Shown here: piece after piece, positions 7,183 through 61,222 of the stretch | Layout of the letters: each line of letters starts with the position of its first letter | Numbering within the stretch: the stretch's first letter is position 1 | IMG/VR virus record: IMGVR_UViG_3300042359_000853 | Coordinates: 124,001-188,000 of that record | Strand: one strand, 5' to 3' | Length of the DNA stretch: 64,000 bases | The notes under the pieces: model-generated | Told to the model about the DNA's origin: nothing | What the model saw: the letters and a program-made list of their open reading frames with translations, nothing else | The model's database searches: none | Translations under genes and position numbers: made by a program

Positions 7183-10100
7183 ATGAATTTTACGATTGAG
7201 TGGTTTCAGTACATGACCTCAGATCTGGGTAATCCCAGAGTTTTTTCGATAAATAGTTTTCCGACTGCTAAAATCGCGGTCTCGATAGAAAGTAGCATCT
7301 TTCGTCTGTGGATAAATTCAGGCATTCGGTTTCAAGAGCCTGTTTCTCTAATACTTAACAATTGGACACACTTCGCTATTGTTTATACAAACGGTTCAAT
7401 AAAAATCTATAAAAACGGTCAAAAAATAGGAAATACCATTGAATATTATTCTGGTATGATCACTGATTATGATGATAAACTTTACATCGGAACTGATCTC
7501 GAAGAAGATTCTTATTTTTCTGGAAGATTATCAAATTTTAGATGGACGCAAGATGAAGTGTATTCATCAAACTTCAATCCATTGGCACAAAATTACGATG
7601 TATTAGCTGATACGATTTTATTATTGAAATTTGATGATATCAATGATTTTGTTTATGATAGCTCAGATACTGGCAAAGACACTTATGGATTCACTCTTTC
7701 TTGGAGCTCTACGAGTCCTATTGGTGGAAGTGGTTCAGTTGTTTTCAACGGTATTGATGGATATCTATATGTAGAACCGGTTGATGATTTTGATTTTTCT
7801 GCCGCTAGTATAACACCAACACAGACACCAACTCAAACCTTGACACCGACACCATCTCTAAGTATAGTTGCAACAAGTTCTACAACAACTACAACAACCA
7901 CGACTACTTCAACTTCTACTACTTCAACAACTACTTTAGAGCCAAGAGTAAATTATACAAGTAGAGTAAAATTTTTGTATAATAAAATAACTAAAATAGC
8001 TAGACGTGGTAAAGATTACTACTTCGAATGGGAACTGTTAGTTGATGAATCCTTAAAGCAAAAAGAATTAGGACTACTATCAGATGTTATGTTGAAATAC
8101 TTTGGTATAAACTGGGACAGATATCCGACCTTGGAAGATTTCAAGAAAAAATCTTGGCCACATATAAGATCTGTTACCGAAGGAGTGCAGAATGTTGAGC
8201 TTAAAAAAATATCAGATGCAAAAGGTGTTTACCAAATAGGTTGGGATTTCTATCTCGTATCTAACAACTATAGTATTGGACAAATCAAGGAACTTTTTGA
8301 GGATGGTAAGGAGATATTGAGAGTTTCTACACTTCTACAAATAGAAGATTTAACTTCAGCTACCTCAAGTATTTACGAAAAATATACCACTGGCATAGAT
8401 CTACTGAAATCAGATTATTTACTTATTTCACCTACACCCACCCCTACACAAACACCTACACCAACCGTAACGGTCACTCCTACAAAAACACCAACTAGAA
8501 CTCCAACACCAACTAGAACTATGACACCGACGGTCACTCAAACTCCAACAGTGACCGCAACACCAACTGTAACACCAACTGTAACATCAACTCTGACACC
8601 CACAGTTACACCATCTGTAACTGAAACGCCCACACAAACCTCAACTGTAACACCAACACAAACCGTAACACCAACCGAAACTTCTACTCAAACACCTACT
8701 CAAACACCAACTATTACACCTTCTGTGACTTCAACTATCACACCTACCGTTACATCAACACCAACAGAAACACCCACTCAAACATCGAGTGAGACTCCTA
8801 CCTCTACCGTTACACCTACTTTAACTGTTACACCGACTAGGACCGTAACACCGACCAATACACAAACACCTACAACCACACCAACTTCAACAATAACAGA
8901 AGGGTCGATAGCTTCGGGTGCTTTCTTCTACTTTGATCCAGGTAATACATCTTCTTATAGTGGCTCAGGAACTACTCTAAATGACATTAGTGGTAATGGT
9001 AATAACGGCTCTATATTCGGAAGTCCAGTTCATACATCTGGTGCGGGTGGATACTTCACCTTTGATGGTGTTAATGATTACATTTTGAGTCCAGACATTT
9101 ATTTCGGAGCTACCGAAACACATACTATTGAAGTTTGGATACGTCCTACCGCTGTGGATGATTGTATATGGTCCGATCTTGGACAGCCTACAATAAATGA
9201 TGGATATCATTTTGCCGGGGCACAAATATTACAAACAGGACCATTCAATCAAATCATTACTTCTTTGTGGAATGGAACTGCTGTAACTAGAGTAGTCAAT
9301 GGTGCGGGTAGTTATCTTAATACCTGGAAGCAAGTAGTTAGAGTGTATAACGGTAGTGTATTAACATCATATCTCGATGGGGTCATCGGTGGAACAATTT
9401 CAATTGCATATGATTCTCCACACAATGATGGAATCACCGATTGGTATTTAGCTTTTGGTGCTATTGATACGACTACTTACTTGGGCTCGGTTGCTGGTTA
9501 TTTTGCTGGTGGATATGGTATTATTCGATATTATAGAAGAGCTCTCTCTGCTAGTGAGGTTCTACAAAATTATAACTCAACGGTCTATAGCTACAACACC
9601 ACTACAACAACTACAACAACTATTGCACCTTCTTCAACACCAACTCCTACTCAAACACCTACTCAAACACCCACTTCTAGTCAAACACCAACCACCACAC
9701 CAACATCAAGTATAACAAACACACCAACTCAAACTCCTACAAATACTCCTTCTGTTACAACAACATCGGCTCCTGTTACTCTAGGGTTGGTTATTGAGTT
9801 GGATGCCTATGATTCTTCCAGCTATCCAGGGTCAGGAACAACAGTTTCTAACTTGCGGTCACCTGGAACCTACGATCATACGCTTACGGGCTCATCATTT
9901 ACAACTTTAAATGGTATCAAATGTTTTGACTGTTCATCAGGAACAAAGAGAGTTGTTGTAAATGGAACTGGTCCTCTCCTACCTACTACTGGATATACCT
10001 ATATTACTTGGGGTAGATTGAAAAACGATACCAGTGGATTTAGAACTTTACTTTACACAAATTCTCCTAAATATACACCAATAACTATCCCCGATGGTTC

Positions 10101-11112
10101 AAACACACTTGCGTATTGGGACACAGCACTCAGAAGTTCTGGATATGATGCGTCATCATCGGTAGAAGTTTGGGTTCAGTTTGCTGTCGTAGGTGACAGC
10201 TCATCCCAAACATTCTACATAAACGGATCTCAAGTTGGTAGTACAATTTCTTTCGGTGCTGGTGGAACTACACACTGGGGTTGGGGTAATAATGATATAG
10301 TTCCGCAATCTTTTGGTCATGTTGCCAATCTATATTTTTACAATAGAAAGTTATCACTAGCAGAAATCACACAACAATATGATTTCCTCTCTCCTAGATT
10401 TGTACAAGTAACACCAACACCAACTTCTACAACAACACCGACACCTACACCAACTCCTACTGTAACACCAAATAGTGATATGTTACTTAAATTAGACGCT
10501 AATCTTTCAGAGAGTTATCCAGGCTCAGGCACTACTTGGTATGATCTAGCAGGCACACAACAAAACATGACTCTTGTTGGTAATCCTACTTTTGTTTCTG
10601 GAACTATATCTTATTTCGATTTCAACGGATCAGGTCAATATGCGCAAGGATCGGGTCTTACTGTTCCAACAACGGTTTATACTAAGTCCGTCTGGTTCTG
10701 GGTAGATGTATATACTGATAACAACATAGTAAGTGGATTTGATGGTGTTGGTGGTCACTTCATGTATATGGGTAGCTCACCAAAAATACAAGTTGGTCAC
10801 CACAATCAAGGGGTTGTATTCAATACCTATCAATCTACTGGAACAATATCACTTAATACATGGTACAATGTAGTTGTAACTTTCAATACTTCGAATGGAT
10901 TTAAAATTTATATAAATGGTCAGTTCGACAGTTCTCACAATATGACATTAGCACATCTTGGTAGTGGAACTACAAATTTAGCTAGTTACGCTAATACGGG
11001 GGGTAATTATCTAAATGGAAGAATATCAAAAGTCTATACTTGGCAAAAAGTTTTATCTGATCAAGAAGTTCTTGATATGTATAATCTTGATAAATCTTAC
11101 TTTGGTCACTAA
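7183..11112 (+). CDS. Multi-LamG/ConA-like lectin-domain fiber/adhesin with Thr/Pro-rich linkers
   Basis: N-terminal LamG (WTHFAIVY..IYKNG) plus three modules starting D(P/A)xxSxSYxGSGTT with Y(L/I)(D/N)G cores, separated by (TP)n/(T)n tracts. Confidence 0.8.
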   Translation: MNFTIEWFQYMTSDLGNPRVFSINSFPTAKIAVSIESSIFRLWINSGIRFQEPVSLILNNWTHFAIVYTNGSIKIYKNGQKIGNTIEYYSGMITDYDDKLYIGTDLEEDSYFSGRLSNFRWTQDEVYSSNFNPLAQNYDVLADTILLLKFDDINDFVYDSSDTGKDTYGFTLSWSSTSPIGGSGSVVFNGIDGYLYVEPVDDFDFSAASITPTQTPTQTLTPTPSLSIVATSSTTTTTTTTTSTSTTSTTTLEPRVNYTSRVKFLYNKITKIARRGKDYYFEWELLVDESLKQKELGLLSDVMLKYFGINWDRYPTLEDFKKKSWPHIRSVTEGVQNVELKKISDAKGVYQIGWDFYLVSNNYSIGQIKELFEDGKEILRVSTLLQIEDLTSATSSIYEKYTTGIDLLKSDYLLISPTPTPTQTPTPTVTVTPTKTPTRTPTPTRTMTPTVTQTPTVTATPTVTPTVTSTLTPTVTPSVTETPTQTSTVTPTQTVTPTETSTQTPTQTPTITPSVTSTITPTVTSTPTETPTQTSSETPTSTVTPTLTVTPTRTVTPTNTQTPTTTPTSTITEGSIASGAFFYFDPGNTSSYSGSGTTLNDISGNGNNGSIFGSPVHTSGAGGYFTFDGVNDYILSPDIYFGATETHTIEVWIRPTAVDDCIWSDLGQPTINDGYHFAGAQILQTGPFNQIITSLWNGTAVTRVVNGAGSYLNTWKQVVRVYNGSVLTSYLDGVIGGTISIAYDSPHNDGITDWYLAFGAIDTTTYLGSVAGYFAGGYGIIRYYRRALSASEVLQNYNSTVYSYNTTTTTTTTIAPSSTPTPTQTPTQTPTSSQTPTTTPTSSITNTPTQTPTNTPSVTTTSAPVTLGLVIELDAYDSSSYPGSGTTVSNLRSPGTYDHTLTGSSFTTLNGIKCFDCSSGTKRVVVNGTGPLLPTTGYTYITWGRLKNDTSGFRTLLYTNSPKYTPITIPDGSNTLAYWDTALRSSGYDASSSVEVWVQFAVVGDSSSQTFYINGSQVGSTISFGAGGTTHWGWGNNDIVPQSFGHVANLYFYNRKLSLAEITQQYDFLSPRFVQVTPTPTSTTTPTPTPTPTVTPNSDMLLKLDANLSESYPGSGTTWYDLAGTQQNMTLVGNPTFVSGTISYFDFNGSGQYAQGSGLTVPTTVYTKSVWFWVDVYTDNNIVSGFDGVGGHFMYMGSSPKIQVGHHNQGVVFNTYQSTGTISLNTWYNVVVTFNTSNGFKIYINGQFDSSHNMTLAHLGSGTTNLASYANTGGNYLNGRISKVYTWQKVLSDQEVLDMYNLDKSYFGH
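8428..8895 (+). repeat. Low-complexity Thr-Pro coding repeat (mucin-like linker); smaller tracts near 7810-7935, 9595-9770, 10410-10470
   Basis: Degenerate ACNCCN codon runs encoding TPTQTPTxTPT. Confidence 0.9.
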
Positions 11113-15837: not shown

Positions 15838-15869
15838 AAAAAAAACCTGGACAGAATCCAGGTTTTTTT
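15838..15869. terminator. Intrinsic terminator hairpin (bidirectional geometry)
   Basis: AAAAAAAACCTGGA-CAGAA-TCCAGGTTTTTTT. Confidence 0.85.
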
Positions 15870-24922: not shown

Positions 24923-25338
24923 ATTTTTTCAATATTTATATCTCTTTTCATAACCATTATTTCTCTTTCGTCTATTAGTGGTTTTGGAAGTTGTCTACCA
25001 CGACCATCTACTAGATTTTCGATACTAATATAATCAAAGTTTGTAGTAGAACAAAGATATAGAAAATCACTATCTCTGATTGAAGAGGGACCATCGGTAA
25101 GTAGTTGATGAGTGATATTCACTATTTCTGTATCAAGACTAAAGTTTCTAAGAGAGGTCTCGTTGAAATCTGGATGTCTATCAACAACTAGAATATAGAG
25201 TAGAATTTTCTCAGCTCTTGGAAGAAGTCGAAATAGTTCTTCAATAGAAACTACATTGAAAAGCCTGTAGGCTTTCACGAAATTGTCGGAAACTTTTATT
25301 TTTCCAGTTTTTTGGTCTTGATTAAGTAGTGATGTCAT
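24910..25338 (-). CDS. Hypothetical protein with C-terminal RDxxIxxIL motif
   Basis: Ends KRDINIEKILVD. Confidence 0.6.
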   Translation of the reverse strand: MTSLLNQDQKTGKIKVSDNFVKAYRLFNVVSIEELFRLLPRAEKILLYILVVDRHPDFNETSLRNFSLDTEIVNITHQLLTDGPSSIRDSDFLYLCSTTNFDYISIENLVDGRGRQLPKPLIDEREIMVMKRDINIEKILVD

Positions 25339-26483: not shown

Positions 26484-26509
26484 AAATCTAGGTTTTTATA
26501 TATACCCCT

Positions 26510-27250
26510 GTGTCAAAGAAACTTTACGATAAAACACTTGAGTATTTAGGTAAAAAAGAAAAAATTCTTTTTATAACTACATCAAATAGATGGACAGATG
26601 AACTCCCTAAATCTACTCAACTAGCTAAAGCTCTCAGAGAAGAAGTAGGACCATCTAAAGTAGAGATTATCGATGCCTTCAAGCTTAATATTGTTCCGTG
26701 TGAAGGAAACGTTTCTACTAAAGAAGGTGGCAATCATTGTGGTAGTAAAGGTTCCCAACTAAAAGATTCAAGAAAAAATCCAAGTGGTCATCATAGATGC
26801 TGGGCAAATATCAACTCTCCTGAAGATGAACTTTGGAAAATATCAAGAGAACTTCTAGAAAGTGATGCGGTTGTGTTTTTTGGATCTATTCGGTGGGGTA
26901 AGGTAAATGCTACCTACGCTAAGCTTATTGAAAGACTTACCTGGCTAGAAAATCGTCATACTGCTCTTGGTGAATCAAACTTGGTAAAAAATATTGACGC
27001 AGGGGTAATTGCTCTAGGTCATAACTTTAATGTAGAACAAGCTGTGAAACTAGAAAAAGAAAATCTTACTTTTTTTGGATTCAAGGTTCCGGATGAACTT
27101 TCTTGGGGATGGCAGTGGTCTAAAAACTCTTCTGATGAAGGTCTTCGTGGATACAAAGAGGACATTAAAGATTTCACAGAAGAGTTCTCACTGGACGAGC
27201 ACATAGAAGAATGTGTAAAAAGATTTGGAGATTTCATAAAAAAGGGGTAG
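26510..27250 (+). CDS. Flavodoxin-like / NAD(P)H-dependent FMN reductase family protein
   Basis: ILFITTSNR..STQLA..LNIVPCEG..ESDAVVFFGSIRWG..LIERL. Confidence 0.8.
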   Translation: MSKKLYDKTLEYLGKKEKILFITTSNRWTDELPKSTQLAKALREEVGPSKVEIIDAFKLNIVPCEGNVSTKEGGNHCGSKGSQLKDSRKNPSGHHRCWANINSPEDELWKISRELLESDAVVFFGSIRWGKVNATYAKLIERLTWLENRHTALGESNLVKNIDAGVIALGHNFNVEQAVKLEKENLTFFGFKVPDELSWGWQWSKNSSDEGLRGYKEDIKDFTEEFSLDEHIEECVKRFGDFIKKG

Positions 27251-27330
27251 AATCTCTACTGAAACTCTACCCCTCGGGCATTTGGTCCTTTAGCTCCACC
27301 ACTATATTTTTATCTAAAACATAGAAAACT
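27240..27330 (-). ncRNA. Candidate small non-coding RNA with intrinsic terminator
   Basis: Minus-strand TATCATATATA upstream, GC-richer core AGTGGTGGAGCTAAAGGACCAAATGCCCG, 9-bp hairpin AGGGGTAGA/TCTACCCCT followed by a U-run; no convincing ORF. Confidence 0.4.
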
Positions 27331-27360
27331 TATCTTATATATGATATTTTAGGAAATGGT

Positions 27361-27391
27361 TTTGATATCTAGAACTTTTTATCTATATTTG
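27361..27391 (+). promoter_or_regulatory. Bacteroidota promoter TTTG-N19-TATATTTG
   Basis: Both elements upstream of the ABC transporter. Confidence 0.7.
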
Positions 27392-27404
27392 CTAAAAAAA
27401 ATAT

Positions 27405-29216
27405 ATGATAACCTCTTCAGATAAACAGATATTCTCGAGTATCTGGAAATTTTCAAAGCCTTTTAAACGTGATCTTAGCTCGGTCTTTCTTCTTATTGTT
27501 TTAGTTTCGGTCTTGGATGCGGTAAATCACTACTGCTTGAGTAAGGTATTTGACACAGCTGGCGTAAAATCAGGTCTAGAAAATTCGGTCTGGTGGCTCT
27601 TTTTAGCTGGATTTGCTATGATATCAAAGATATTTTTCTCAAAATGGCGAGAAAAGATTGAGATCCAAAAACTAGATGTGAATGTTTCTAACTTTCTAAA
27701 TAGCTATTCTATATCGAAGTTTTTTACTTTTTCTAACGGCCAACACCTAAACGAGCACTCGGGTATCAAGCAGAATATTATACAAACTGGTTTTGGATCC
27801 TTGAGAAATCAGATGAATGTGTTTATCTACAACCTTGTTCCTACCCTATCGCAGTTTGTAGTTGCTATTTTTATATTTTATTGGATAAATATTTGGATGG
27901 GTATTGGATATACCCTATTTTCTCTATTTTTTGGCTTTATTCTTTTTAGATTTCATAAGTTTTTAACGCCACAGGTTGAGAAGGTAAGAGAAGTTGAAGT
28001 ATCAAACTCAAGGCTAATCTCTGAACTTTATCGGTATGTTGTTCTTATTAAAAATGAAGTAGCCGAAGATAAATCTCTCGGGGATCTCGATACAGCTCAA
28101 ACAAAATACAAAAGCTCTTATAGTCAAACCTGGCTCTCGGCTATTGATAGACTTCTGATTATTCGGCTTTCATCACAGGTGTTCAGATTTTTAAGTATTC
28201 TTTTTTGTGTATATCTTATTTATCAAGACCAAATCACGATGGGATCTATATTTTTAGTTTATCTGTGGTCTGGAAACTACATCAATGCTATTTGGTCTAT
28301 TACCGATCTACAAAAGGGTTATATTACTGATAAAATAAATATACAAAAGTATTTTGATCTGATTGGCACTGAAAGTGATGTGGTTCAAGATAAAAATCCT
28401 ATAACTGAAGGTCTTGTTGGTGATATTGAGTTCAAGAGTGTTCATTTTGCCTATCCTAAAAGAGTTGATAAATATGAAGGTGAAAAGATTTCACCGGATG
28501 AAAAAAACAGTTTTGTTTTAGATGGTATTTCTTTTGTGATACCTAAGGGAAAAAAAGTTGCTTTTGTAGGTGAGTCTGGCTCTGGTAAATCAACAATCGC
28601 AAATCTTATTCGTAGATCTTTCGATCCACAGATGGGAGAGATTTGTGTGAATGGTAACCCCTTGAAAAAGATTGACATCAAAAAGTTTCTCAAAAAGATT
28701 GGTTCAGTTGATCAGGATATTATTCTTTTTGATAGATCACTTCGTGATAATATTTCTTTTGGAACCGGTAAGCGTCTCACTGATGAGGAGCTCTCTAAAG
28801 TTGCTAAGCTATCGGGTATTGATAACTTTTTCACGAAGCTAGAGTTTGGTTGGGATACGATTATCGGTGAGAGAGGAGCTAAACTCTCTGGTGGGGAGCG
28901 TCAAAGAATAGGCATCGCAAGAGCACTTGCTAAAGAACCAGAGATCCTGATTTTTGATGAAGCGACCTCAGCACTTGACTCAAAAAATGAAAAACAAGTA
29001 TCTAAGGCTATTGAAAAATCCTCTTTTGGAAAAACCTCGATTATTATTACACACCGACTTTCAACTGCTCTTGCTTGTGATAAAATATTTGTAATGAGAC
29101 TTGGTAGAATTTTAGACTCTGGTTCTCACGCTGAACTTTTAGAACGGTGTGAATACTACCGAGAACTTGTTAAAAATCAACTCAATCCAAAAAGCGAAAC
29201 AAAAACTGAAGTCTAA
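27405..29216 (+). CDS. ABC exporter, fused TMD + ATPase (MsbA-like)
   Basis: TM N-half; GESGSGKS, LSGGERQR, ILIFDEATSALD, ITHRLST. Confidence 0.95.
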   Translation: MITSSDKQIFSSIWKFSKPFKRDLSSVFLLIVLVSVLDAVNHYCLSKVFDTAGVKSGLENSVWWLFLAGFAMISKIFFSKWREKIEIQKLDVNVSNFLNSYSISKFFTFSNGQHLNEHSGIKQNIIQTGFGSLRNQMNVFIYNLVPTLSQFVVAIFIFYWINIWMGIGYTLFSLFFGFILFRFHKFLTPQVEKVREVEVSNSRLISELYRYVVLIKNEVAEDKSLGDLDTAQTKYKSSYSQTWLSAIDRLLIIRLSSQVFRFLSILFCVYLIYQDQITMGSIFLVYLWSGNYINAIWSITDLQKGYITDKINIQKYFDLIGTESDVVQDKNPITEGLVGDIEFKSVHFAYPKRVDKYEGEKISPDEKNSFVLDGISFVIPKGKKVAFVGESGSGKSTIANLIRRSFDPQMGEICVNGNPLKKIDIKKFLKKIGSVDQDIILFDRSLRDNISFGTGKRLTDEELSKVAKLSGIDNFFTKLEFGWDTIIGERGAKLSGGERQRIGIARALAKEPEILIFDEATSALDSKNEKQVSKAIEKSSFGKTSIIITHRLSTALACDKIFVMRLGRILDSGSHAELLERCEYYRELVKNQLNPKSETKTEV

Positions 29217-29566: not shown

Positions 29567-29737
29567 ATGAATACAATCAACAAAGAGCAGTTTATGGGTC
29601 TAATCAGACACGCGCTCACATTCGTAGGTGGTGTCTTGGTTATGCGTGGAGATCTCGACGCAGTAGGTCAAGAGCAACTTATCGGTTCAGTGATGACCCT
29701 AGCCGGACTTGTCTGGTCTTACTGGGTGAAAAGATAA
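29567..29737 (+). CDS. Putative small holin, 56 aa, 2 TM (not in ORF track)
   Basis: MNTINKEQFMGLIRHALTFVGGVLVMRGDLDAVGQEQLIGSVMTLAGLVWSYWVKR; IRHxLTxxGG..G..WS pattern of small phage holin-like proteins. Confidence 0.7.
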   Translation: MNTINKEQFMGLIRHALTFVGGVLVMRGDLDAVGQEQLIGSVMTLAGLVWSYWVKR

Positions 29738-29816: not shown

Positions 29817-31940
29817 ATGAGACCAAGATCTATTGACGAAGTATGGCGGCAAATGCAAGTAGAAAAGCAACTACAAGAGCAGAGAAGATTCGAACAAGAA
29901 AGAAAAATGTGGGAACAAAGAGAAAGGCAAAGACAAGAATATCTCTTATCCATAAAAATGAATGAGAAGCTAGCACCGACAGTTCCTACTTCAGCAGCTG
30001 CTTCTGCTGGAGGAACAGTTCAGACGATTCAAGATCAAGACTTTCCTACTCTTTTTGGTGAAACACACATGATCACTTGGGCTGATGTATCAACAGATAC
30101 TTGGAAATACATCGTTCATAACTTCAATACTGGTGAGCTTTCTGAAATATTTGATACAGAATTGATATACGATAGTGGCAACGAATGGTATCTTTATGAT
30201 GAATGGCTGGCGGTTTCTGAAAAGGGGCATTCTGTTGTTTTCAGAAAGTCAGGAACCAATTTATATAAGATTTATTTTTTCAACGTAAATGGAGAACTCG
30301 TTGGTCAAAAAGATCTAGAAAGTCGCAAAGATTTTCAATATACCGAAAACGCACAGATATATGTGGGAGATTTGAACGGTCTAGGCACTGTTTATCATTT
30401 TGATGGTGATAATGTAAGAACTCATACGTTTGAGGGTCTGAGTGCATCTTCTATCGAAGTTGATGATTTTGGTGAAGATGATGTAACAAAAGATGGTAGC
30501 GTCATAATTGAGGCGCCAGATAATAGTAAAACATTCATAGCCAGGCCTAGTGGTGAGTTAGTAGAGATAACCTCTGATATCCAAGGTGCAAATCAAGTTT
30601 TATTAGATTATAACACAGATTTTTTATTTGCAGTAGATCAAGATCTTTGGGTAAAGTCGATTTCACAAGGGGGAGAGCTAAAAAATACGATGGATTTATC
30701 ACCTTATAATATAGAGAATTGGAATGAGATTTCTCTGTATGGTGATAACTGTGCTTACGTGCTTCTCACTTCGTATGATAGCTACAGAATGCTTGTTTCT
30801 TATGATGGTGATTCTAATCAGTTTGTTTCTATTACTTTTTCTGATTCTCTGATATATGATATCAGCTATCACGAAAGAAGCTGGCAATCGCCAAGACCTT
30901 ACTTCGGTAAAACTTTGATACTGACTACCTATCAGAGTAGAGCAGATAACTATATAAGTGGATTTGAGGGTTCAGGAGTAGAAATCAGTTGGTTACTGAA
31001 AAGTGCAGATGAATTTCAATCCTATATGTTTAGTGGAACTGTTTCATTTTTTGAAAGTGGTGGCAACTGGGTTGGTGATCGAACTTTTGCTATAGGTGAA
31101 AATCCAATGGTTATGTTCGCATACACACAAAGTGTTATTCAGGCAGGGTTTCTTCTATCTTCTGGATTTTTCACACAATCAACAGGCGTTACCTTGTCTC
31201 TCTGCTCAAATATTTGGGGAAAACCGATTGGCGATCATTCGTTTGCTGTTTTTGATGTTTTGGATGATAGAGTTTGGCAGGTCTATGATCAAAACTCTAT
31301 TGTTTCACAAACATCTTCTAGTTCTGCTTGGTCGTGGGGAACTAGTAACTGGGATGTCAATCGTTATGGAACACTTTTAGTTTTAGGTGGTGGTGGTAAT
31401 AATTTTGCTTACACAACAGAAATTGGATTGACTTCGGCACCAAGTGATATAAATATTATTTATAATAATGTGAATTGGGGCGACAGAACTGGTATTTCTA
31501 CTGAATATCAAATAGGCGTTCGTTATATTCCAGGTCAAGAGGGAAATGCTTACGTAGCTGGATTTTATGTTTTATCTAGGTCTGGTTTTTCTTCTTATGA
31601 AGAGTTCCCCTTTACTGGTCTTTCTCCTAGTATCCCACACACAATTTCTGGGATTGAAATAGGAACCGAAATTGTTTCTTTTAATTTGATAAATCAGGAT
31701 AATTCGAACTTAAGATGTATTGTTTATGACCTTTCTACACTTGGATTAATTGATGATTATGATACCGAACAATCTACCGATGTTTATATCCAATCTTGGA
31801 AAAACAGAGTAGCTGTTATTAAACAAAATGCTAATGAAAGACAGATTAAATTCATAGGAAAACACGGAATACAAACAAAAAAGGTTGATGCGAATAGTTT
31901 TTCAGATGAATCCAACGATCCAAGAGACAATGATGATTAA
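29817..31940 (+). CDS. Beta-rich (propeller-like) putative virion protein with N-terminal charged helix
   Basis: R/Q/E helix, SAAASAGG linker, then aromatic-rich beta strands. Confidence 0.55.
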   Translation: MRPRSIDEVWRQMQVEKQLQEQRRFEQERKMWEQRERQRQEYLLSIKMNEKLAPTVPTSAAASAGGTVQTIQDQDFPTLFGETHMITWADVSTDTWKYIVHNFNTGELSEIFDTELIYDSGNEWYLYDEWLAVSEKGHSVVFRKSGTNLYKIYFFNVNGELVGQKDLESRKDFQYTENAQIYVGDLNGLGTVYHFDGDNVRTHTFEGLSASSIEVDDFGEDDVTKDGSVIIEAPDNSKTFIARPSGELVEITSDIQGANQVLLDYNTDFLFAVDQDLWVKSISQGGELKNTMDLSPYNIENWNEISLYGDNCAYVLLTSYDSYRMLVSYDGDSNQFVSITFSDSLIYDISYHERSWQSPRPYFGKTLILTTYQSRADNYISGFEGSGVEISWLLKSADEFQSYMFSGTVSFFESGGNWVGDRTFAIGENPMVMFAYTQSVIQAGFLLSSGFFTQSTGVTLSLCSNIWGKPIGDHSFAVFDVLDDRVWQVYDQNSIVSQTSSSSAWSWGTSNWDVNRYGTLLVLGGGGNNFAYTTEIGLTSAPSDINIIYNNVNWGDRTGISTEYQIGVRYIPGQEGNAYVAGFYVLSRSGFSSYEEFPFTGLSPSIPHTISGIEIGTEIVSFNLINQDNSNLRCIVYDLSTLGLIDDYDTEQSTDVYIQSWKNRVAVIKQNANERQIKFIGKHGIQTKKVDANSFSDESNDPRDNDD

Positions 31941-32665
31941 GGAGTCGCTACCCCTTTTTTAGAAACTACTAGAGCAGACATTTCGTTGGCAAATCCAATC
32001 GATGATATAACATCTCCTGTTTTTAGATATTCTATAGAAAAACTAGCTAAAAAAGTATCACCTGCGCCTGAAACATCGATAGTTTCTAGAGGGTTCTTTT
32101 GAGGAAATATAACACCTCTATACCTACTGCCACGAGAGCCTAGTGTTATAATCAGGTTATTATCATCTAGATGTTTGTTGATATCTCTTTCACTATCGTT
32201 TAGCTTAATAAAGGTGAATAGACTAGCTAGTTGCTGATCTAACTTTTTCTTTGTATCAAGTATAGATATCTTAGAACTTCTAGCTATAAGCTCTAGAATT
32301 TGGGAATTCAGAAATCCCTTATTGTAATCAGAAACTATCACTAGATCGAAAGTTGATAAATCTGGTAAGTTTTCAAGAGTCTTACAGGGATTATTTTCAC
32401 CTTCATCAATTCTCAAAAACATATGGTTTGATTTTTTATCAACATATCTTGTCTTAGTAATCAAATCTTCTTGATGTAGGGAAAAAATATCAACTTCTTT
32501 ACTCAATGCTTCTAAATTTTTAGCAACATTTCCGGCCATTCCTGGATTTTCTATGATCTCTACCGGTTTTACAACTGGAACAGGCGCCTCTGGTGATAAT
32601 CTTGATGATGAGCAGTAGATAAATCTATCCAAACAAATCTCACCAATCACTGCTATTTTCTTCAC
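31937..32665 (-). CDS. rfaE: D-glycero-D-manno-heptose-7-phosphate kinase (HldE/RfaE domain I, PfkB family)
   Basis: IGEICLD..RLSPEAPVPVV..GMAGNVA..VSDYNKG..DVSGAGDT. Confidence 0.9.
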   Translation of the reverse strand: MKKIAVIGEICLDRFIYCSSSRLSPEAPVPVVKPVEIIENPGMAGNVAKNLEALSKEVDIFSLHQEDLITKTRYVDKKSNHMFLRIDEGENNPCKTLENLPDLSTFDLVIVSDYNKGFLNSQILELIARSSKISILDTKKKLDQQLASLFTFIKLNDSERDINKHLDDNNLIITLGSRGSRYRGVIFPQKNPLETIDVSGAGDTFLASFSIEYLKTGDVISSIGFANEMSALVVSKKGVATP

Positions 32666-48753: not shown

Positions 48754-49103
48754 TGGTGGAGGTGCTGGGATTCGAACCCAGGTTTCTACATTTACCTAAA
48801 TAATCAATCATTCACAAGCTTAGAACTCTTTTCTAAGAGAACCAACTATCGGATTTTATCGAAGAACCTTCCGAAAAAACTTTTGAGGCTATTTATAGAG
48901 TTACCTCATTCTCGGAAACGTCTAGGCTACGGCCAATCTGTTTGCCTTTAGGATGTTGTTGCGTAGGGCGAATACTAAGTCTTCAACGCTTCCTACTTCA
49001 TTCGTGTTGCCACTTAAAGTTTTCATACAACTTATGAATCGGTGAGTATGATCCGATGCTTGCTTGATTACCCGAATAAATGAGTCAAAAGCCATTCACC
49101 CCC
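48754..49103 (-). ncRNA. ssrA: tmRNA
   Basis: 5' GGGGGTGAATGGCTTTTGAC, 3' GGGTTCGAATCCCAGCACCTCCACCA; 7-bp acceptor stem with G3.U wobble and encoded CCA; internal tag ORF 48922-49011 ending LAVA*. Confidence 0.93.
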
Positions 49104-49110
49104 GAGTGTT

Positions 49111-49123
49111 GATATATATAAAA
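49111..49123 (-). promoter_or_regulatory. Representative phage late-type promoter motif TTT(T/A)ATATATA
   Basis: Sits about 8 nt upstream of the tmRNA 5' end; about 20 further copies upstream of genes in the window. Confidence 0.65.
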
Positions 49124-61182: not shown

Positions 61183-61222
61183 TAAAACTTTTAATCTTTA
61201 TTTTTATATATTAAAATTTTGG

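What the first reader, a model, noticed from the sequence alone, without database searches (positions are those of the whole stretch)
27240..27346. Candidate ~90-nt small RNA with its own promoter and terminator
The U-tailed hairpin at the end of the flavodoxin gene is oriented for a minus-strand transcript, yet no minus-strand gene ends here. A TATCATATATA late-like motif lies about 90 nt upstream on that strand. The interval has a GC-richer core (AGUGGUGGAGCUAAAGGACCAAAUGCCCG) and no convincing ORF. This reads as a self-contained non-coding transcription unit.
Basis: partly seen in the sequence, partly recalled or inferred. Interest (0 to 1): 0.6.

Follow-up and report, generated by a model that had tools for sequence, protein, structure and literature searches.

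The report
Conserved small RNA unit in phage
Between two forward-strand genes of an uncultured T4-like lake phage lies a conserved reverse-strand unit of about 92 bases (phage promoter motif, stem-loop, invariant UAGUGGUGGAG, terminator) that is most likely a non-coding RNA and resembles one module of the cyanophage wcaG RNA motif, but no transcript has been seen.

Summary
A 13-15 bp hairpin (27244-27273) overlaps the stop codon of the 246-aa WrbA/flavodoxin-like gene and has a U-run only on the minus strand. No minus-strand gene ends there. The motif ATATATA (27342->27336, minus) lies about 90 nt upstream.

That motif is the genome's main promoter signal: 161 of 177 copies are intergenic, it is oriented, and it also precedes the portal and tmRNA genes. 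Here it reads only on the minus strand and has no ORF behind it.

Thirteen sequence variants from three related phage lineages (81-99% WrbA identity) keep the same layout: a -10-like hexamer, GUUU(U)C 7-9 nt later, an AU-rich hairpin, the invariant UAGUGGUGGAG, a variable linker, then the terminator and U-run. In one relative a foreign gene sits directly beside the block, so the block is a discrete unit.

No ORF is conserved. Metatranscriptome contigs do not cover the site, so expression is unproven.

A model built only from real cyanophage wcaG modules finds this site as its only hit in the genome (20.8 bits, E about 0.002). The full Rfam wcaG model scores 16-19 bits against a cut-off of 42, so membership is not shown.

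Verdict: a probable stand-alone phage ncRNA, a single-module wcaG-like variant of unknown function.

The parts
27336..27342 (-). ATATATA promoter motif (hexamer TATATA 27341->27336 preceded by A27342), present only in the minus orientation.
   Evidence: The genome-wide motif is 21x enriched upstream of genes. A occupies position -1 in 70 of 74 sites. 161 of 177 copies are intergenic. The + strand here reads T-TATATA-T, and T at -1 occurs in only 3 of 74 sites. At the homologous place relatives carry TATATA, TATAAT or TATAAA.
27328..27330 (-). Predicted transcription start, 6-8 nt after the hexamer. The RNA would begin (A)GUUUUC.
   Evidence: Inferred from the hexamer-to-ATG spacing of 11-13 nt in the leaderless class of genes and from the tmRNA gene's geometry. 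The G of GUUU(U)C lies 7-9 nt after the hexamer in every lineage. Not measured.
27302..27324 (-). Hairpin 1: CUAUGUUUU (27324->27316), loop AGAUA, AAAAUAUAG (27310->27302), preceded by the conserved GUUUU (27329->27325).
   Evidence: Present in the MFE and centroid folds. 95% of alignment cells are paired, with one pair changed on both sides. Within-lineage differences fall in the loop (L113, L142). A G-U pair makes the hairpin form on the minus strand only in the window's lineage: -4.4 against -0.5 kcal/mol.
27294..27304 (-). Invariant 11-mer UAGUGGUGGAG. UGGUGGAGC (27301->27293) is unpaired in most predicted folds.
   Evidence: Identical in all 13 distinct variants. It is unique in the genome's intergenic DNA. 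It aligns with the GUGGYG flank of wcaG modules.
27276..27293 (-). Variable linker, 19-37 nt in relatives.
   Evidence: Not conserved in sequence or length between lineages.
27238..27275 (-). Intrinsic terminator: stem 27273->27244 (core GGGGUAGA/UCUACCCC plus an upper stem containing G-U pairs), U6 at 27243->27238. Predicted RNA 3' end about 27238-27240, giving an RNA of about 92 nt.
   Evidence: The stem is kept in all lineages, with 98% of cells paired and 2 pairs changed on both sides. Folding is -20.1 (minus) against -13.4 (plus) kcal/mol. A U-run of 5-7 is on the minus strand in every variant; a T-run on the + strand occurs only in the L003 type.
26510..27250 (+). Convergent WrbA/flavodoxin-like gene, 246 aa, GTG start, own ATATATA promoter at 26498-26504. 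Its last codons AAA AAG GGG TAG form the A-run and left arm of the terminator.
   Evidence: More distant homologues end ...DFIK* with no hairpin, so KKG* is an extension into the terminator.
27362..27404 (+). Promoter region of the downstream ABC-transporter gene (27405-29216): TTGATA-16-TATATT, with TATATTTG at 27384-27391. It is outside the RNA unit.
   Evidence: In L087 this stretch stays with the ABC gene while the RNA block stays with the WrbA-like gene, the two being separated by an inserted 422-aa gene.

Best explanation
The interval holds a self-contained minus-strand transcription unit in a T4-like phage. The phage's own -10-type promoter (ATATATA, no -35 needed) would start an RNA at about 27329. 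The RNA runs about 92 nt and stops at the intrinsic terminator whose stem overlaps the stop codon of the convergent WrbA-like gene.

The RNA does not code for protein. Its functional core is a 5' module: GUUUUC, a 9-bp hairpin closed by C-G, then the invariant single-stranded UGGUGGAG. This has the same plan as one module of the two-module wcaG RNA motif of T4-like cyanophages.

Because a terminator and only the antisense of a gene follow it, it cannot be a leader for a downstream ORF. It would act as a free small RNA. Most likely the exposed UGGUGGAG binds a partner that is conserved across hosts, either an RNA or a protein.

What is shown: the motif, its orientation, its conservation, the conserved structure and the absence of a conserved ORF. 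What is inferred: transcription, the RNA ends, any action in trans and the partner.
For: Promoter.
- ATATATA is the genome's main promoter signal. It occurs in 68 of 123 upstream regions (21x), 161 of 177 copies lie in the 8% of DNA that is intergenic, and A occupies -1 in 70 of 74 sites.
- It precedes the T4-type portal gene and the tmRNA gene, so it can drive a non-coding RNA.
- Here it exists only in the minus orientation, and it is effectively the only non-palindromic site without an ORF behind it.

Terminator.
- It is the only one-way terminator in the record with no same-strand gene before it.

Conservation.
- 13 distinct variants from three lineages share hexamer, GUUU(U)C at +7-9, hairpin, UAGUGGUGGAG, terminator and U-run, while spacers and linker differ.
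- 96.8% of cells are paired, against 40-64% when the partners are slid.
- In L087 an inserted gene ends 18 nt from the hexamer and the block is intact, which fits a promoter that needs no upstream element.

Strand.
- In all 7 variants of the window's lineage the minus strand folds 6.6-10 kcal/mol better than the plus strand, because of G-U pairs.
- By parsimony over the three lineages, a minus-only U-run is the ancestral state.

wcaG likeness.
- The Rfam wcaG model hits the same strand and place in all four spacer types at 15.8-19.0 bits. It is the best wcaG hit in the genome (E 0.07).
- A one-module model made only from 11 real modules of six Synechococcus phages finds this site as its single hit in 227.6 kb (20.8 bits, E 0.002). 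It is also the top hit in 327 kb of related phage DNA and the top hit in each relative's locus.
- In two of the six real wcaG loci examined (S-SM2, DSL-LC03) the motif is also followed by an intrinsic terminator.
Against: - No transcript evidence. Two metatranscriptome runs hold parts of neighbouring genes, but no contig covers 27092-27855, and contigs carry no strand.
- The hexamer is TATAAT in one lineage and TATAAA in another. Genes of those same phages use TATATA, so the promoter is not strictly kept.
- The U-tail template AAAAAG also encodes Lys-Lys.
- In the L003 lineage the hairpin is a symmetric A7/T7 two-way terminator, like most terminators of this genome. In that lineage hairpin 1 folds better on the + strand.
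- Covariation is thin: 3 pairs from four lineages.
- wcaG scores are far below the Rfam cut-off of 42 bits. The reverse search (our model against cyanophage loci) gives only 12.6 bits, E 0.1. The E-values come from a shortened calibration.
- No phage target for the exposed motif stands out above shuffled controls.
Confidence: 0.6

Rival explanations
1. There is no separate RNA. The hairpin is the usually two-way terminator or insulator of the WrbA-like gene. The conserved block is + strand 3'-UTR or intercistronic sequence of a WrbA-ABC transcript, or a DNA site. The minus-strand U-run persists only because it encodes Lys-Lys, and the ATATATA is a stray or back-side copy.
For: - Most terminators in this genome are symmetric A-run/hairpin/T-run, and the L003 lineage has exactly that here.
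- The A-run is coding.
- In the L003 type, hairpin 1 and the whole interval fold slightly better on the + strand.
- The + strand reads ...GCUCCACCA, a motif that could have a + strand meaning.
Against: - Three of the four spacer types have no T-run on the + strand, so the hairpin is a poor + strand terminator there.
- The KKG* tail is an extension that more distant homologues lack, so the ORF appears to have run into a pre-existing terminator rather than the reverse.
- ATATATA is almost never idle: 2 of 161 intergenic copies.
- The spacing from hexamer to GUUUC is kept while the spacer sequence changes.
- In the window's lineage G-U pairs favour the minus strand by 7-10 kcal/mol.
- No tRNA-like or terminator-like fold explains the 11-mer on the + strand.
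Confidence: 0.2
2. The block is the 3' UTR and terminator of a minus-strand protein gene that the window's phage has lost (or that L087 has gained). Any small RNA is a 3'-UTR-derived by-product.
For: In L087 a 422-aa minus-strand ORF ends 18 nt upstream of the hexamer, and its transcript would run through the block to the same terminator.
Against: - Only 1 of 13 variants has that gene. All the others, including the two outgroup lineages, have the ABC gene's promoter there instead, so an insertion in L087 is the simpler history.
- The block keeps its own promoter motif in L087.
Confidence: 0.07
3. The unit encodes a micro-protein, for example the 11-codon frame GUG GUG GAG ... UAG, which would explain conservation of GUGGUGGAG.
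For: A GTG-started frame MVELKDQMPEG* exists in the window, and a similar one, MVELVDRMPEG*, exists in L086.
Against: - In the L003 and L109/L110 lineages the frame has a different length and sequence and runs on into the antisense of the gene.
- No start context of the kind seen at this phage's genes is present.
- Conservation stops right after GGAG.
Confidence: 0.03
4. The short transcript primes or marks a replication origin, as proposed for short origin transcripts in T4.
For: The idea rests only on my own knowledge of T4 origins and on the phage being T4-like. A switch in gene orientation lies 2 kb away, at 25338/25347.
Against: There is no GC-skew turning point near genome position 151 kb. 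There are no iterons and no repeats. A strong terminator would end an R-loop primer after 92 nt.
Confidence: 0.03

Closest known systems
wcaG RNA motif (Rfam RF01761; Weinberg et al. 2010, PMC2864571)
   Same: - Both occur in T4-like phages.
- One module has the same plan: GUUUC, a hairpin whose first pair is C-G, then GUGG(U/C)G on the 3' side. Compare real module 1, GGUUUC-UUGCUU...AAGCAA-GUGGUGCGG, with GUUUUC-UAUGUUUU...AAAAUAUA-GUGGUGGAGC here.
- A model of real single modules picks this site alone in the genome.
- Some real copies are followed by an intrinsic terminator.
   Different: - Here there is one module, not two, and no central CGGAUGGG...CCCGCC hairpin.
- The stem is AU-only and 9 bp long rather than 7.
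- The loop lacks the conserved CAGUCAAAGA.
- The Rfam score is 16-19 bits against a cut-off of 42.
- The source is a freshwater, 33% G+C phage of unknown host, not a marine cyanophage.
- No downstream gene lies on its strand, whereas wcaG was described as a likely cis-regulatory or riboswitch candidate in front of exopolysaccharide and high-light genes.
Small RNAs of bacteria and phages that carry their own promoter and an intrinsic terminator (generic trans-acting sRNA layout)
   Same: It has its own promoter, a length of about 90 nt, a 5' hairpin, a conserved unpaired stretch, a Rho-independent terminator with a U-tail, and no conserved ORF.
   Different: No transcript, target or chaperone is known. 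The promoter is a phage-specific -10-only motif. The RNA is also fully antisense to the 3' end of a convergent gene, so a cis-antisense role is possible.
The tmRNA gene of the same phage (window 48754-49103, minus)
   Same: It has the same transcription-unit design: ATATATA, a few nucleotides, a structured RNA, then a hairpin and U-run. Its 3' end, CUCCACCA, is the exact complement of the candidate's UGGUGGAG.
   Different: tmRNA is a recognised family (65.3 bits). The candidate has no tRNA-like or mRNA-like part. The 8-nt complementarity is no better than chance in energy terms.

Membership tests
wcaG RNA (RF01761) | Score at or above the curated gathering threshold (42 bits) of the Rfam covariance model | tested here: not met
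   17.7 bits (window), 19.0 (L003), 16.2 (L110) and 15.8 (L086), all on the minus strand at the homologous place. Genome-wide E is 0.07. Control genomes also give sub-threshold hits.
wcaG RNA (RF01761) | Two tandem hairpin modules with a central GC-rich hairpin between them | tested here: not met
   Only one module is present. The model's first hairpin aligns to the promoter region or is deleted. No second module lies upstream.
wcaG RNA (RF01761) | Single-module consensus: GUUUC, a hairpin closed by C-G, then GUGGYG | tested here: met
   Model R2, built from 11 real modules, scores 20.8 bits (E 0.002) and gives one hit in 227.6 kb. That hit is the top one in 327 kb of other phage DNA, where the next scores 16.2 bits with its hairpin deleted. 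The pattern scan finds the longest stem here, 9 pairs. E-values are rough.
wcaG RNA (RF01761) | Carried by T4-like phages | tested here: met
   Portal_T4 (gp20) at E 4.8e-50 and a type II topoisomerase subunit in the window. The described family is marine or cyanophage; this phage comes from lake water and its host is unknown.
wcaG RNA (RF01761) | Lies in the 5' UTR of a same-strand gene (exopolysaccharide or high-light genes) | tested here: not met
   On its strand it is followed by a terminator and then by the antisense of the WrbA-like gene.
Independently transcribed small non-coding RNA | Own promoter in the right orientation | tested here: met
   By motif only: an oriented ATATATA on the minus strand alone. 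Weaker variants TATAAT and TATAAA occur in two lineages.
Independently transcribed small non-coding RNA | Own terminator on the same strand | tested here: met
   A U-run of 5-7 is kept in all 13 variants.
Independently transcribed small non-coding RNA | No conserved ORF | tested here: met
Independently transcribed small non-coding RNA | A transcript of the predicted strand and ends is detected | tested here: inconclusive
   RNA runs X18 and X19 give contigs over neighbouring genes only, with none over 27092-27855 and no strand information.
T4-type late transcription unit | A -10-only late promoter (TATAAATA in T4, from my own knowledge) read by a phage late sigma factor | not tested
   The motif here is ATATATA and it precedes the portal gene. 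I did not search for gp55 or gp33 homologues and there are no timing data.

The most novel reading that the evidence does not exclude
The invariant unpaired UGGUGGAG(C) would be a docking site for CCA-3' acceptor ends. It is the exact complement of CUCCACCA-3', the 3' end of the phage's own tmRNA, and, with the C, of the GCUCCACCA-3' typical of tRNA-Ala and bacterial tmRNA. Real wcaG modules carry GUGGUG or GUGGCG at the same position.

On this reading, wcaG-type modules in T4-like phages would be free RNAs that bind tRNA or tmRNA 3' ends, in the manner of the T-box UGGN bulge. They would sense or block charging or trans-translation, rather than acting as metabolite riboswitches.
Probability: 0.06. 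Interest if true: 0.85.

Novelty: new variant of a known kind. Interest (0 to 1): 0.5.

Why it matters
Few small RNAs are known from T4-like phages, and none from this uncultured freshwater group with large genomes. This one is defined well enough to be tested: promoter, ends, structure and an invariant 11-mer.

If the link to wcaG is real, it shows two things. The conserved unit of that orphan 'riboswitch candidate' would be a single module. That module can also exist as a free, terminated RNA with no gene to regulate in cis, which argues for a partner acting in trans and narrows the search for what wcaG RNAs do.

The work also gives this phage group a usable promoter model: an oriented ATATATA, spaced for leaderless mRNAs.

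Tried and rejected
- Rfam at gathering thresholds finds nothing in the interval, only the tmRNA elsewhere.
- tRNA or permuted tmRNA on the + strand, suggested by ...GCUCCACCA: ARAGORN finds none in the window or the genome. A hand-built acceptor pairing works only in one lineage, so I rejected it.
- Paralogues: none by BLAST, and none with model R1 in the genome, in 47 other loci or in five large related viral records.
- The GenBank phage collection has no similar DNA. IMG/VR holds only the same phage. Homologues of the WrbA-like gene at 65% identity or less have other neighbours and no such block.
- Expression: a single read-laying run on 5,701 bases (within the 6,000 limit) with three RNA runs and one DNA run gave no contig over the site, so it is uninformative.
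- Target search: duplex energies of the core against 222 phage start regions (best -19.9 kcal/mol) and against tmRNA (-22.2) are no better than shuffled cores (mean best -21.0).
- Replication-origin idea: the GC skew is flat.
- Sigma-70-type promoter on the minus strand: none in the scan. The Bacteroidota-type TAnnTTTG is absent from the minus strand here and is present only in front of the ABC gene.
- The tmRNA of the relatives could not be fetched to test co-variation with the 11-mer, because those records are not held.
- The 12-mer shared with the tmRNA upstream region (AAAACTTATCTT) is one of many chance 12-mers in this AT-rich genome.

Full report
**What the window is.** The window is bases 124001-188000 of a 227,583-bp viral record with 33.5% G+C. 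An identical stretch is in IMG/VR. The phage is T4-like: the window encodes a T4-type portal (Portal_T4, E 4.8e-50) and a type II topoisomerase subunit. It also carries a tmRNA gene. CheckV rates the record 39% complete. Near-identical DNA is present in about 17 lake-water metagenome runs.

**Check of the observation.** The interval 27251-27404 lies between two + strand genes. The first is a 246-aa gene (26510-27250) whose homologues JGI names 'multimeric flavodoxin WrbA'; it has no Pfam hit itself. The second is a 603-aa ABC transporter gene (27405-29216).
- The terminator scan calls a 15-pair hairpin at 27275->27242 on the minus strand, followed by TTTTTT. On the + strand the stem is followed by TCGGGCATTTGG.
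- The stop codon TAG (27248-27250) is inside the stem.
- ATATATA lies at 27342->27336 on the minus strand.
- No minus-strand gene ends here and no ORF is credible.
- The strand folds at -32.8 kcal/mol, against -19.8 +/- 3.4 for shuffles.

**Is the motif a promoter?** I made a crude gene map (222 ORFs, 92% coding) and looked for words enriched upstream of genes.
- ATATATA/TATATAT is present in 68 of 123 upstream regions, 21 times the expectation.
- The hexamer start lies mostly 11-13 nt before the ATG, which is the spacing of leaderless mRNAs. A second group lies at 22-30 nt.
- The motif is oriented: A precedes TATATA in 70 of 74 sites, whereas T follows it in only 10.
- Of 177 oriented copies, 161 lie in the 8% of the genome that is intergenic.
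- It precedes the portal gene, the WrbA-like gene itself (26498-26504) and the tmRNA gene, where it sits 9 nt before the mature 5' end. So it can drive a non-coding RNA.

At the finding the full motif exists only on the minus strand. The + strand has T at -1, which is seen in 3 of 74 sites. Among the 161 intergenic copies, 17 have no ORF of 25 aa or more starting within 70 nt. Fifteen of those are the back side of palindromic sites that serve a gene on the other strand. Only two are non-palindromic orphans: this one, and one inside what looks like an uncalled gene.

**Is the terminator meaningful?** A strict scan of the whole record gives 30 terminators. Those that do not follow a same-strand gene are of three kinds:
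- the reverse reading of symmetric A-run/hairpin/T-run terminators;
- terminators that follow the tmRNA or the small holin gene, neither of which is in my gene map;
- the hairpin at 27244-27273.

So this is the only one-way terminator in the record that follows no same-strand gene.

One caveat applies. Its A-run on the + strand is the codons AAA AAG. But more distant homologues of the protein end ...DFIK* and have no hairpin, while this clade ends ...FIKKG*. The ORF therefore appears to have been extended into the terminator rather than the terminator arising from the coding sequence.

**Relatives.** Homologues of the protein at 81-99% identity were traced to contigs. They give 13 distinct versions of the spacer, from three lineages, falling into four spacer types:
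- the window type, together with L086/L087;
- the L003/L141 type;
- the L109/L110/L137 type.

Homologues at 65% identity or less lie in other contexts without the block.

All 13 versions keep the same order on the minus strand:
- a -10-like hexamer (TATATA, TATAAT or TATAAA);
- the G of GUUU(U)C 7-9 nt later;
- an AU-rich hairpin that begins CUA and ends UAG;
- the invariant UAGUGGUGGAG;
- a linker of 19-37 nt with no conservation;
- the hairpin GGGUAGA.../...UCUACCC and a run of 5-7 U.

For the two helices, 96.8% of cells pair, against 40-64% when the partners are slid. Three pairs change on both sides. Differences within a lineage fall in loops and upstream of the hexamer.

In L087 a 422-aa minus-strand ORF with no Pfam hit is inserted between the block and the ABC gene. 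It ends 18 nt from the hexamer. The block is intact, and the ABC gene keeps its own TATATTTG region. This has two consequences. The block, from the stop codon to about +105, is a discrete unit. Its ATATATA is also not the ABC promoter.

**Which strand?**
- In the seven variants of the window's lineage, G-U pairs in both helices make the minus strand fold 6.6-10 kcal/mol better than the plus strand.
- In the L109/L110 lineage the two strands are equal.
- In the L003 lineage the plus strand is slightly better and the terminator is symmetric (A7/T7).
- A T-run on the + side occurs only in the L003 lineage. With the 81% lineage as outgroup, a minus-only terminator is the simpler ancestral state.

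Strand evidence therefore favours minus, but not in every lineage.

**Expression.** One search found two metatranscriptome runs with small shares of the region. They give contigs over parts of the ABC gene, the holin gene and the upstream gene, but none over 27092-27855, and contigs carry no strand. This neither supports nor refutes a transcript.

**What it resembles.** A permissive Rfam scan of 301 bases gave a weak hit to the wcaG RNA motif on the minus strand (17.7 bits, E 0.42). The same family hits the same place and strand in the three other spacer types, at 19.0, 16.2 and 15.8 bits. It is the best wcaG hit in the whole record (E 0.07). All these scores are far below the cut-off of 42 bits.

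wcaG was described from marine metagenomes and T4-like cyanophages as a riboswitch candidate (PMC2864571). I fetched real copies from six Synechococcus phages. They consist of two modules, GUUUC-hairpin-GUGGUGCGG and GUUUC-hairpin-GUGGCGAGCC, with a GC-rich hairpin between them. The candidate has one such module: GUUUUC-hairpin-GUGGUGGAGC.

I tested the resemblance in four ways:
- A simple pattern (TTTC, a hairpin closed by C-G, GTGG[CT]G) recovers all five modules in three cyanophage loci with no false hits. It gives four hits in this genome, against 0.97 in shuffles, and the candidate has the longest stem.
- A covariance model built only from 11 real modules finds the candidate as its single hit in the 227.6-kb record (20.8 bits, E 0.002).
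- The same model ranks the candidate first in 327 kb of other AT-rich phage DNA, where the next hit scores 16.2 bits with its hairpin deleted. It is also the top hit in each relative's locus.
- The reverse search is weak: 12.6 bits, E 0.1, although its top hit is a real module.

In S-SM2 and DSL-LC03 the real motif is also followed by an intrinsic terminator, and then by a -10-like box before the next gene.

I conclude that the core works like, and may be related to, one wcaG module. It is not a member of the family as defined: the score is below threshold, there is one module instead of two, there is no central hairpin, and no downstream gene lies on its strand.

**Function.** Nothing here shows what the RNA does. 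The RNA ends at a terminator and faces only the antisense of a gene, so it cannot regulate a downstream ORF in cis.

The strict invariance of an unpaired 8-9 nt stretch next to a hairpin, in lineages where the rest has drifted, together with its counterpart in cyanophage modules, points to a partner shared across hosts.

UGGUGGAG is the exact complement of CUCCACCA-3', the end of the phage's tmRNA. With the following C it complements the usual GCUCCACCA-3' of tRNA-Ala and tmRNA (my own knowledge). However, duplex energies against tmRNA and against all phage start regions are no better than for shuffled cores. I keep this only as the novel reading.

A cis-antisense effect on read-through from the WrbA-like gene into the ABC gene is also possible, and is compatible with the main explanation.

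**Verdict.** Expression is still unproven. The nearest known thing is a single module of the wcaG motif; I put true relatedness at about 0.4. The main rival, at about 0.2, is that the hairpin is just a terminator for the convergent gene and the conserved block serves the + strand.

Noticed in passing
window 48754-49103 (minus): A phage-borne tmRNA gene (65.3 bits) with an unusually long 29-residue tag, GNTNEVGSVEDLVFALRNNILKANRLAVA. It has its own ATATATA promoter 9 nt before the 5' GGGGG and its own terminator. The 227.6-kb record contains no tRNA genes.
   Followed up: partly
whole record; for example window 26498-26504, 61200-61215, 49113-49119: ATATATA is a genome-wide oriented promoter motif. 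The hexamer start usually lies 11-13 nt before the start codon, which implies many leaderless mRNAs. A second class lies at 22-30 nt. Palindromic copies serve two divergent genes.
   Followed up: yes
for example window 15846-15862, 63989-64017; genome 39096, 47713, 193737: Most intrinsic terminators of this phage are symmetric A-run/hairpin/T-run, so they can act in both directions.
   Followed up: partly
window 26510-27250 (+): The WrbA/flavodoxin-like protein has no Pfam hit, yet 2,458 relatives were found and 581 matching stretches occur in IMG/VR viral contigs. It is a widespread phage auxiliary gene. One cluster member is filed at NCBI under 'Candidatus Elulimicrobium humile' (NBP57343.1), which suggests that a phage contig was binned into a genome assembled from a metagenome.
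   Followed up: no
window 27405-29216 (+), 29567-29737 (+), 31937-32665 (-): A full ABC transporter (permease plus ATPase, 603 aa), a Pam3-gp28-type holin and a PfkB sugar kinase lie together in a T4-like phage.
   Followed up: no
L087 3851-5119 (minus): A relative carries an extra 422-aa ORF with no Pfam hit, inserted between the RNA block and the ABC gene, together with a new divergent TATATATAT promoter region.
   Followed up: partly
window 27384-27391 and a few other gene fronts: TAnnTTTG, the -7 box typical of Bacteroidota promoters (my own knowledge), lies 12-33 nt before about 15 genes, and no Shine-Dalgarno sequences are evident. This is only a hint about the host.
   Followed up: no
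whole record: CheckV completeness is 39%, and the identical WrbA-like protein sits on contigs of up to 335 kb, so the true genome is probably much larger than 227 kb.
   Followed up: no
L121 (S-SM2) 630-800; L133 (DSL-LC03) 120-330: In two cyanophages the genuine wcaG RNA is followed by a strong intrinsic terminator and then by a TATAAT-like box before the next gene. That fits a free RNA at least as well as a riboswitch leader.
   Followed up: partly
window 7183-11112 (+): A 1,309-aa protein with four Laminin_G_3 (concanavalin-like lectin) repeats, probably a fibre or adhesin.
   Followed up: no
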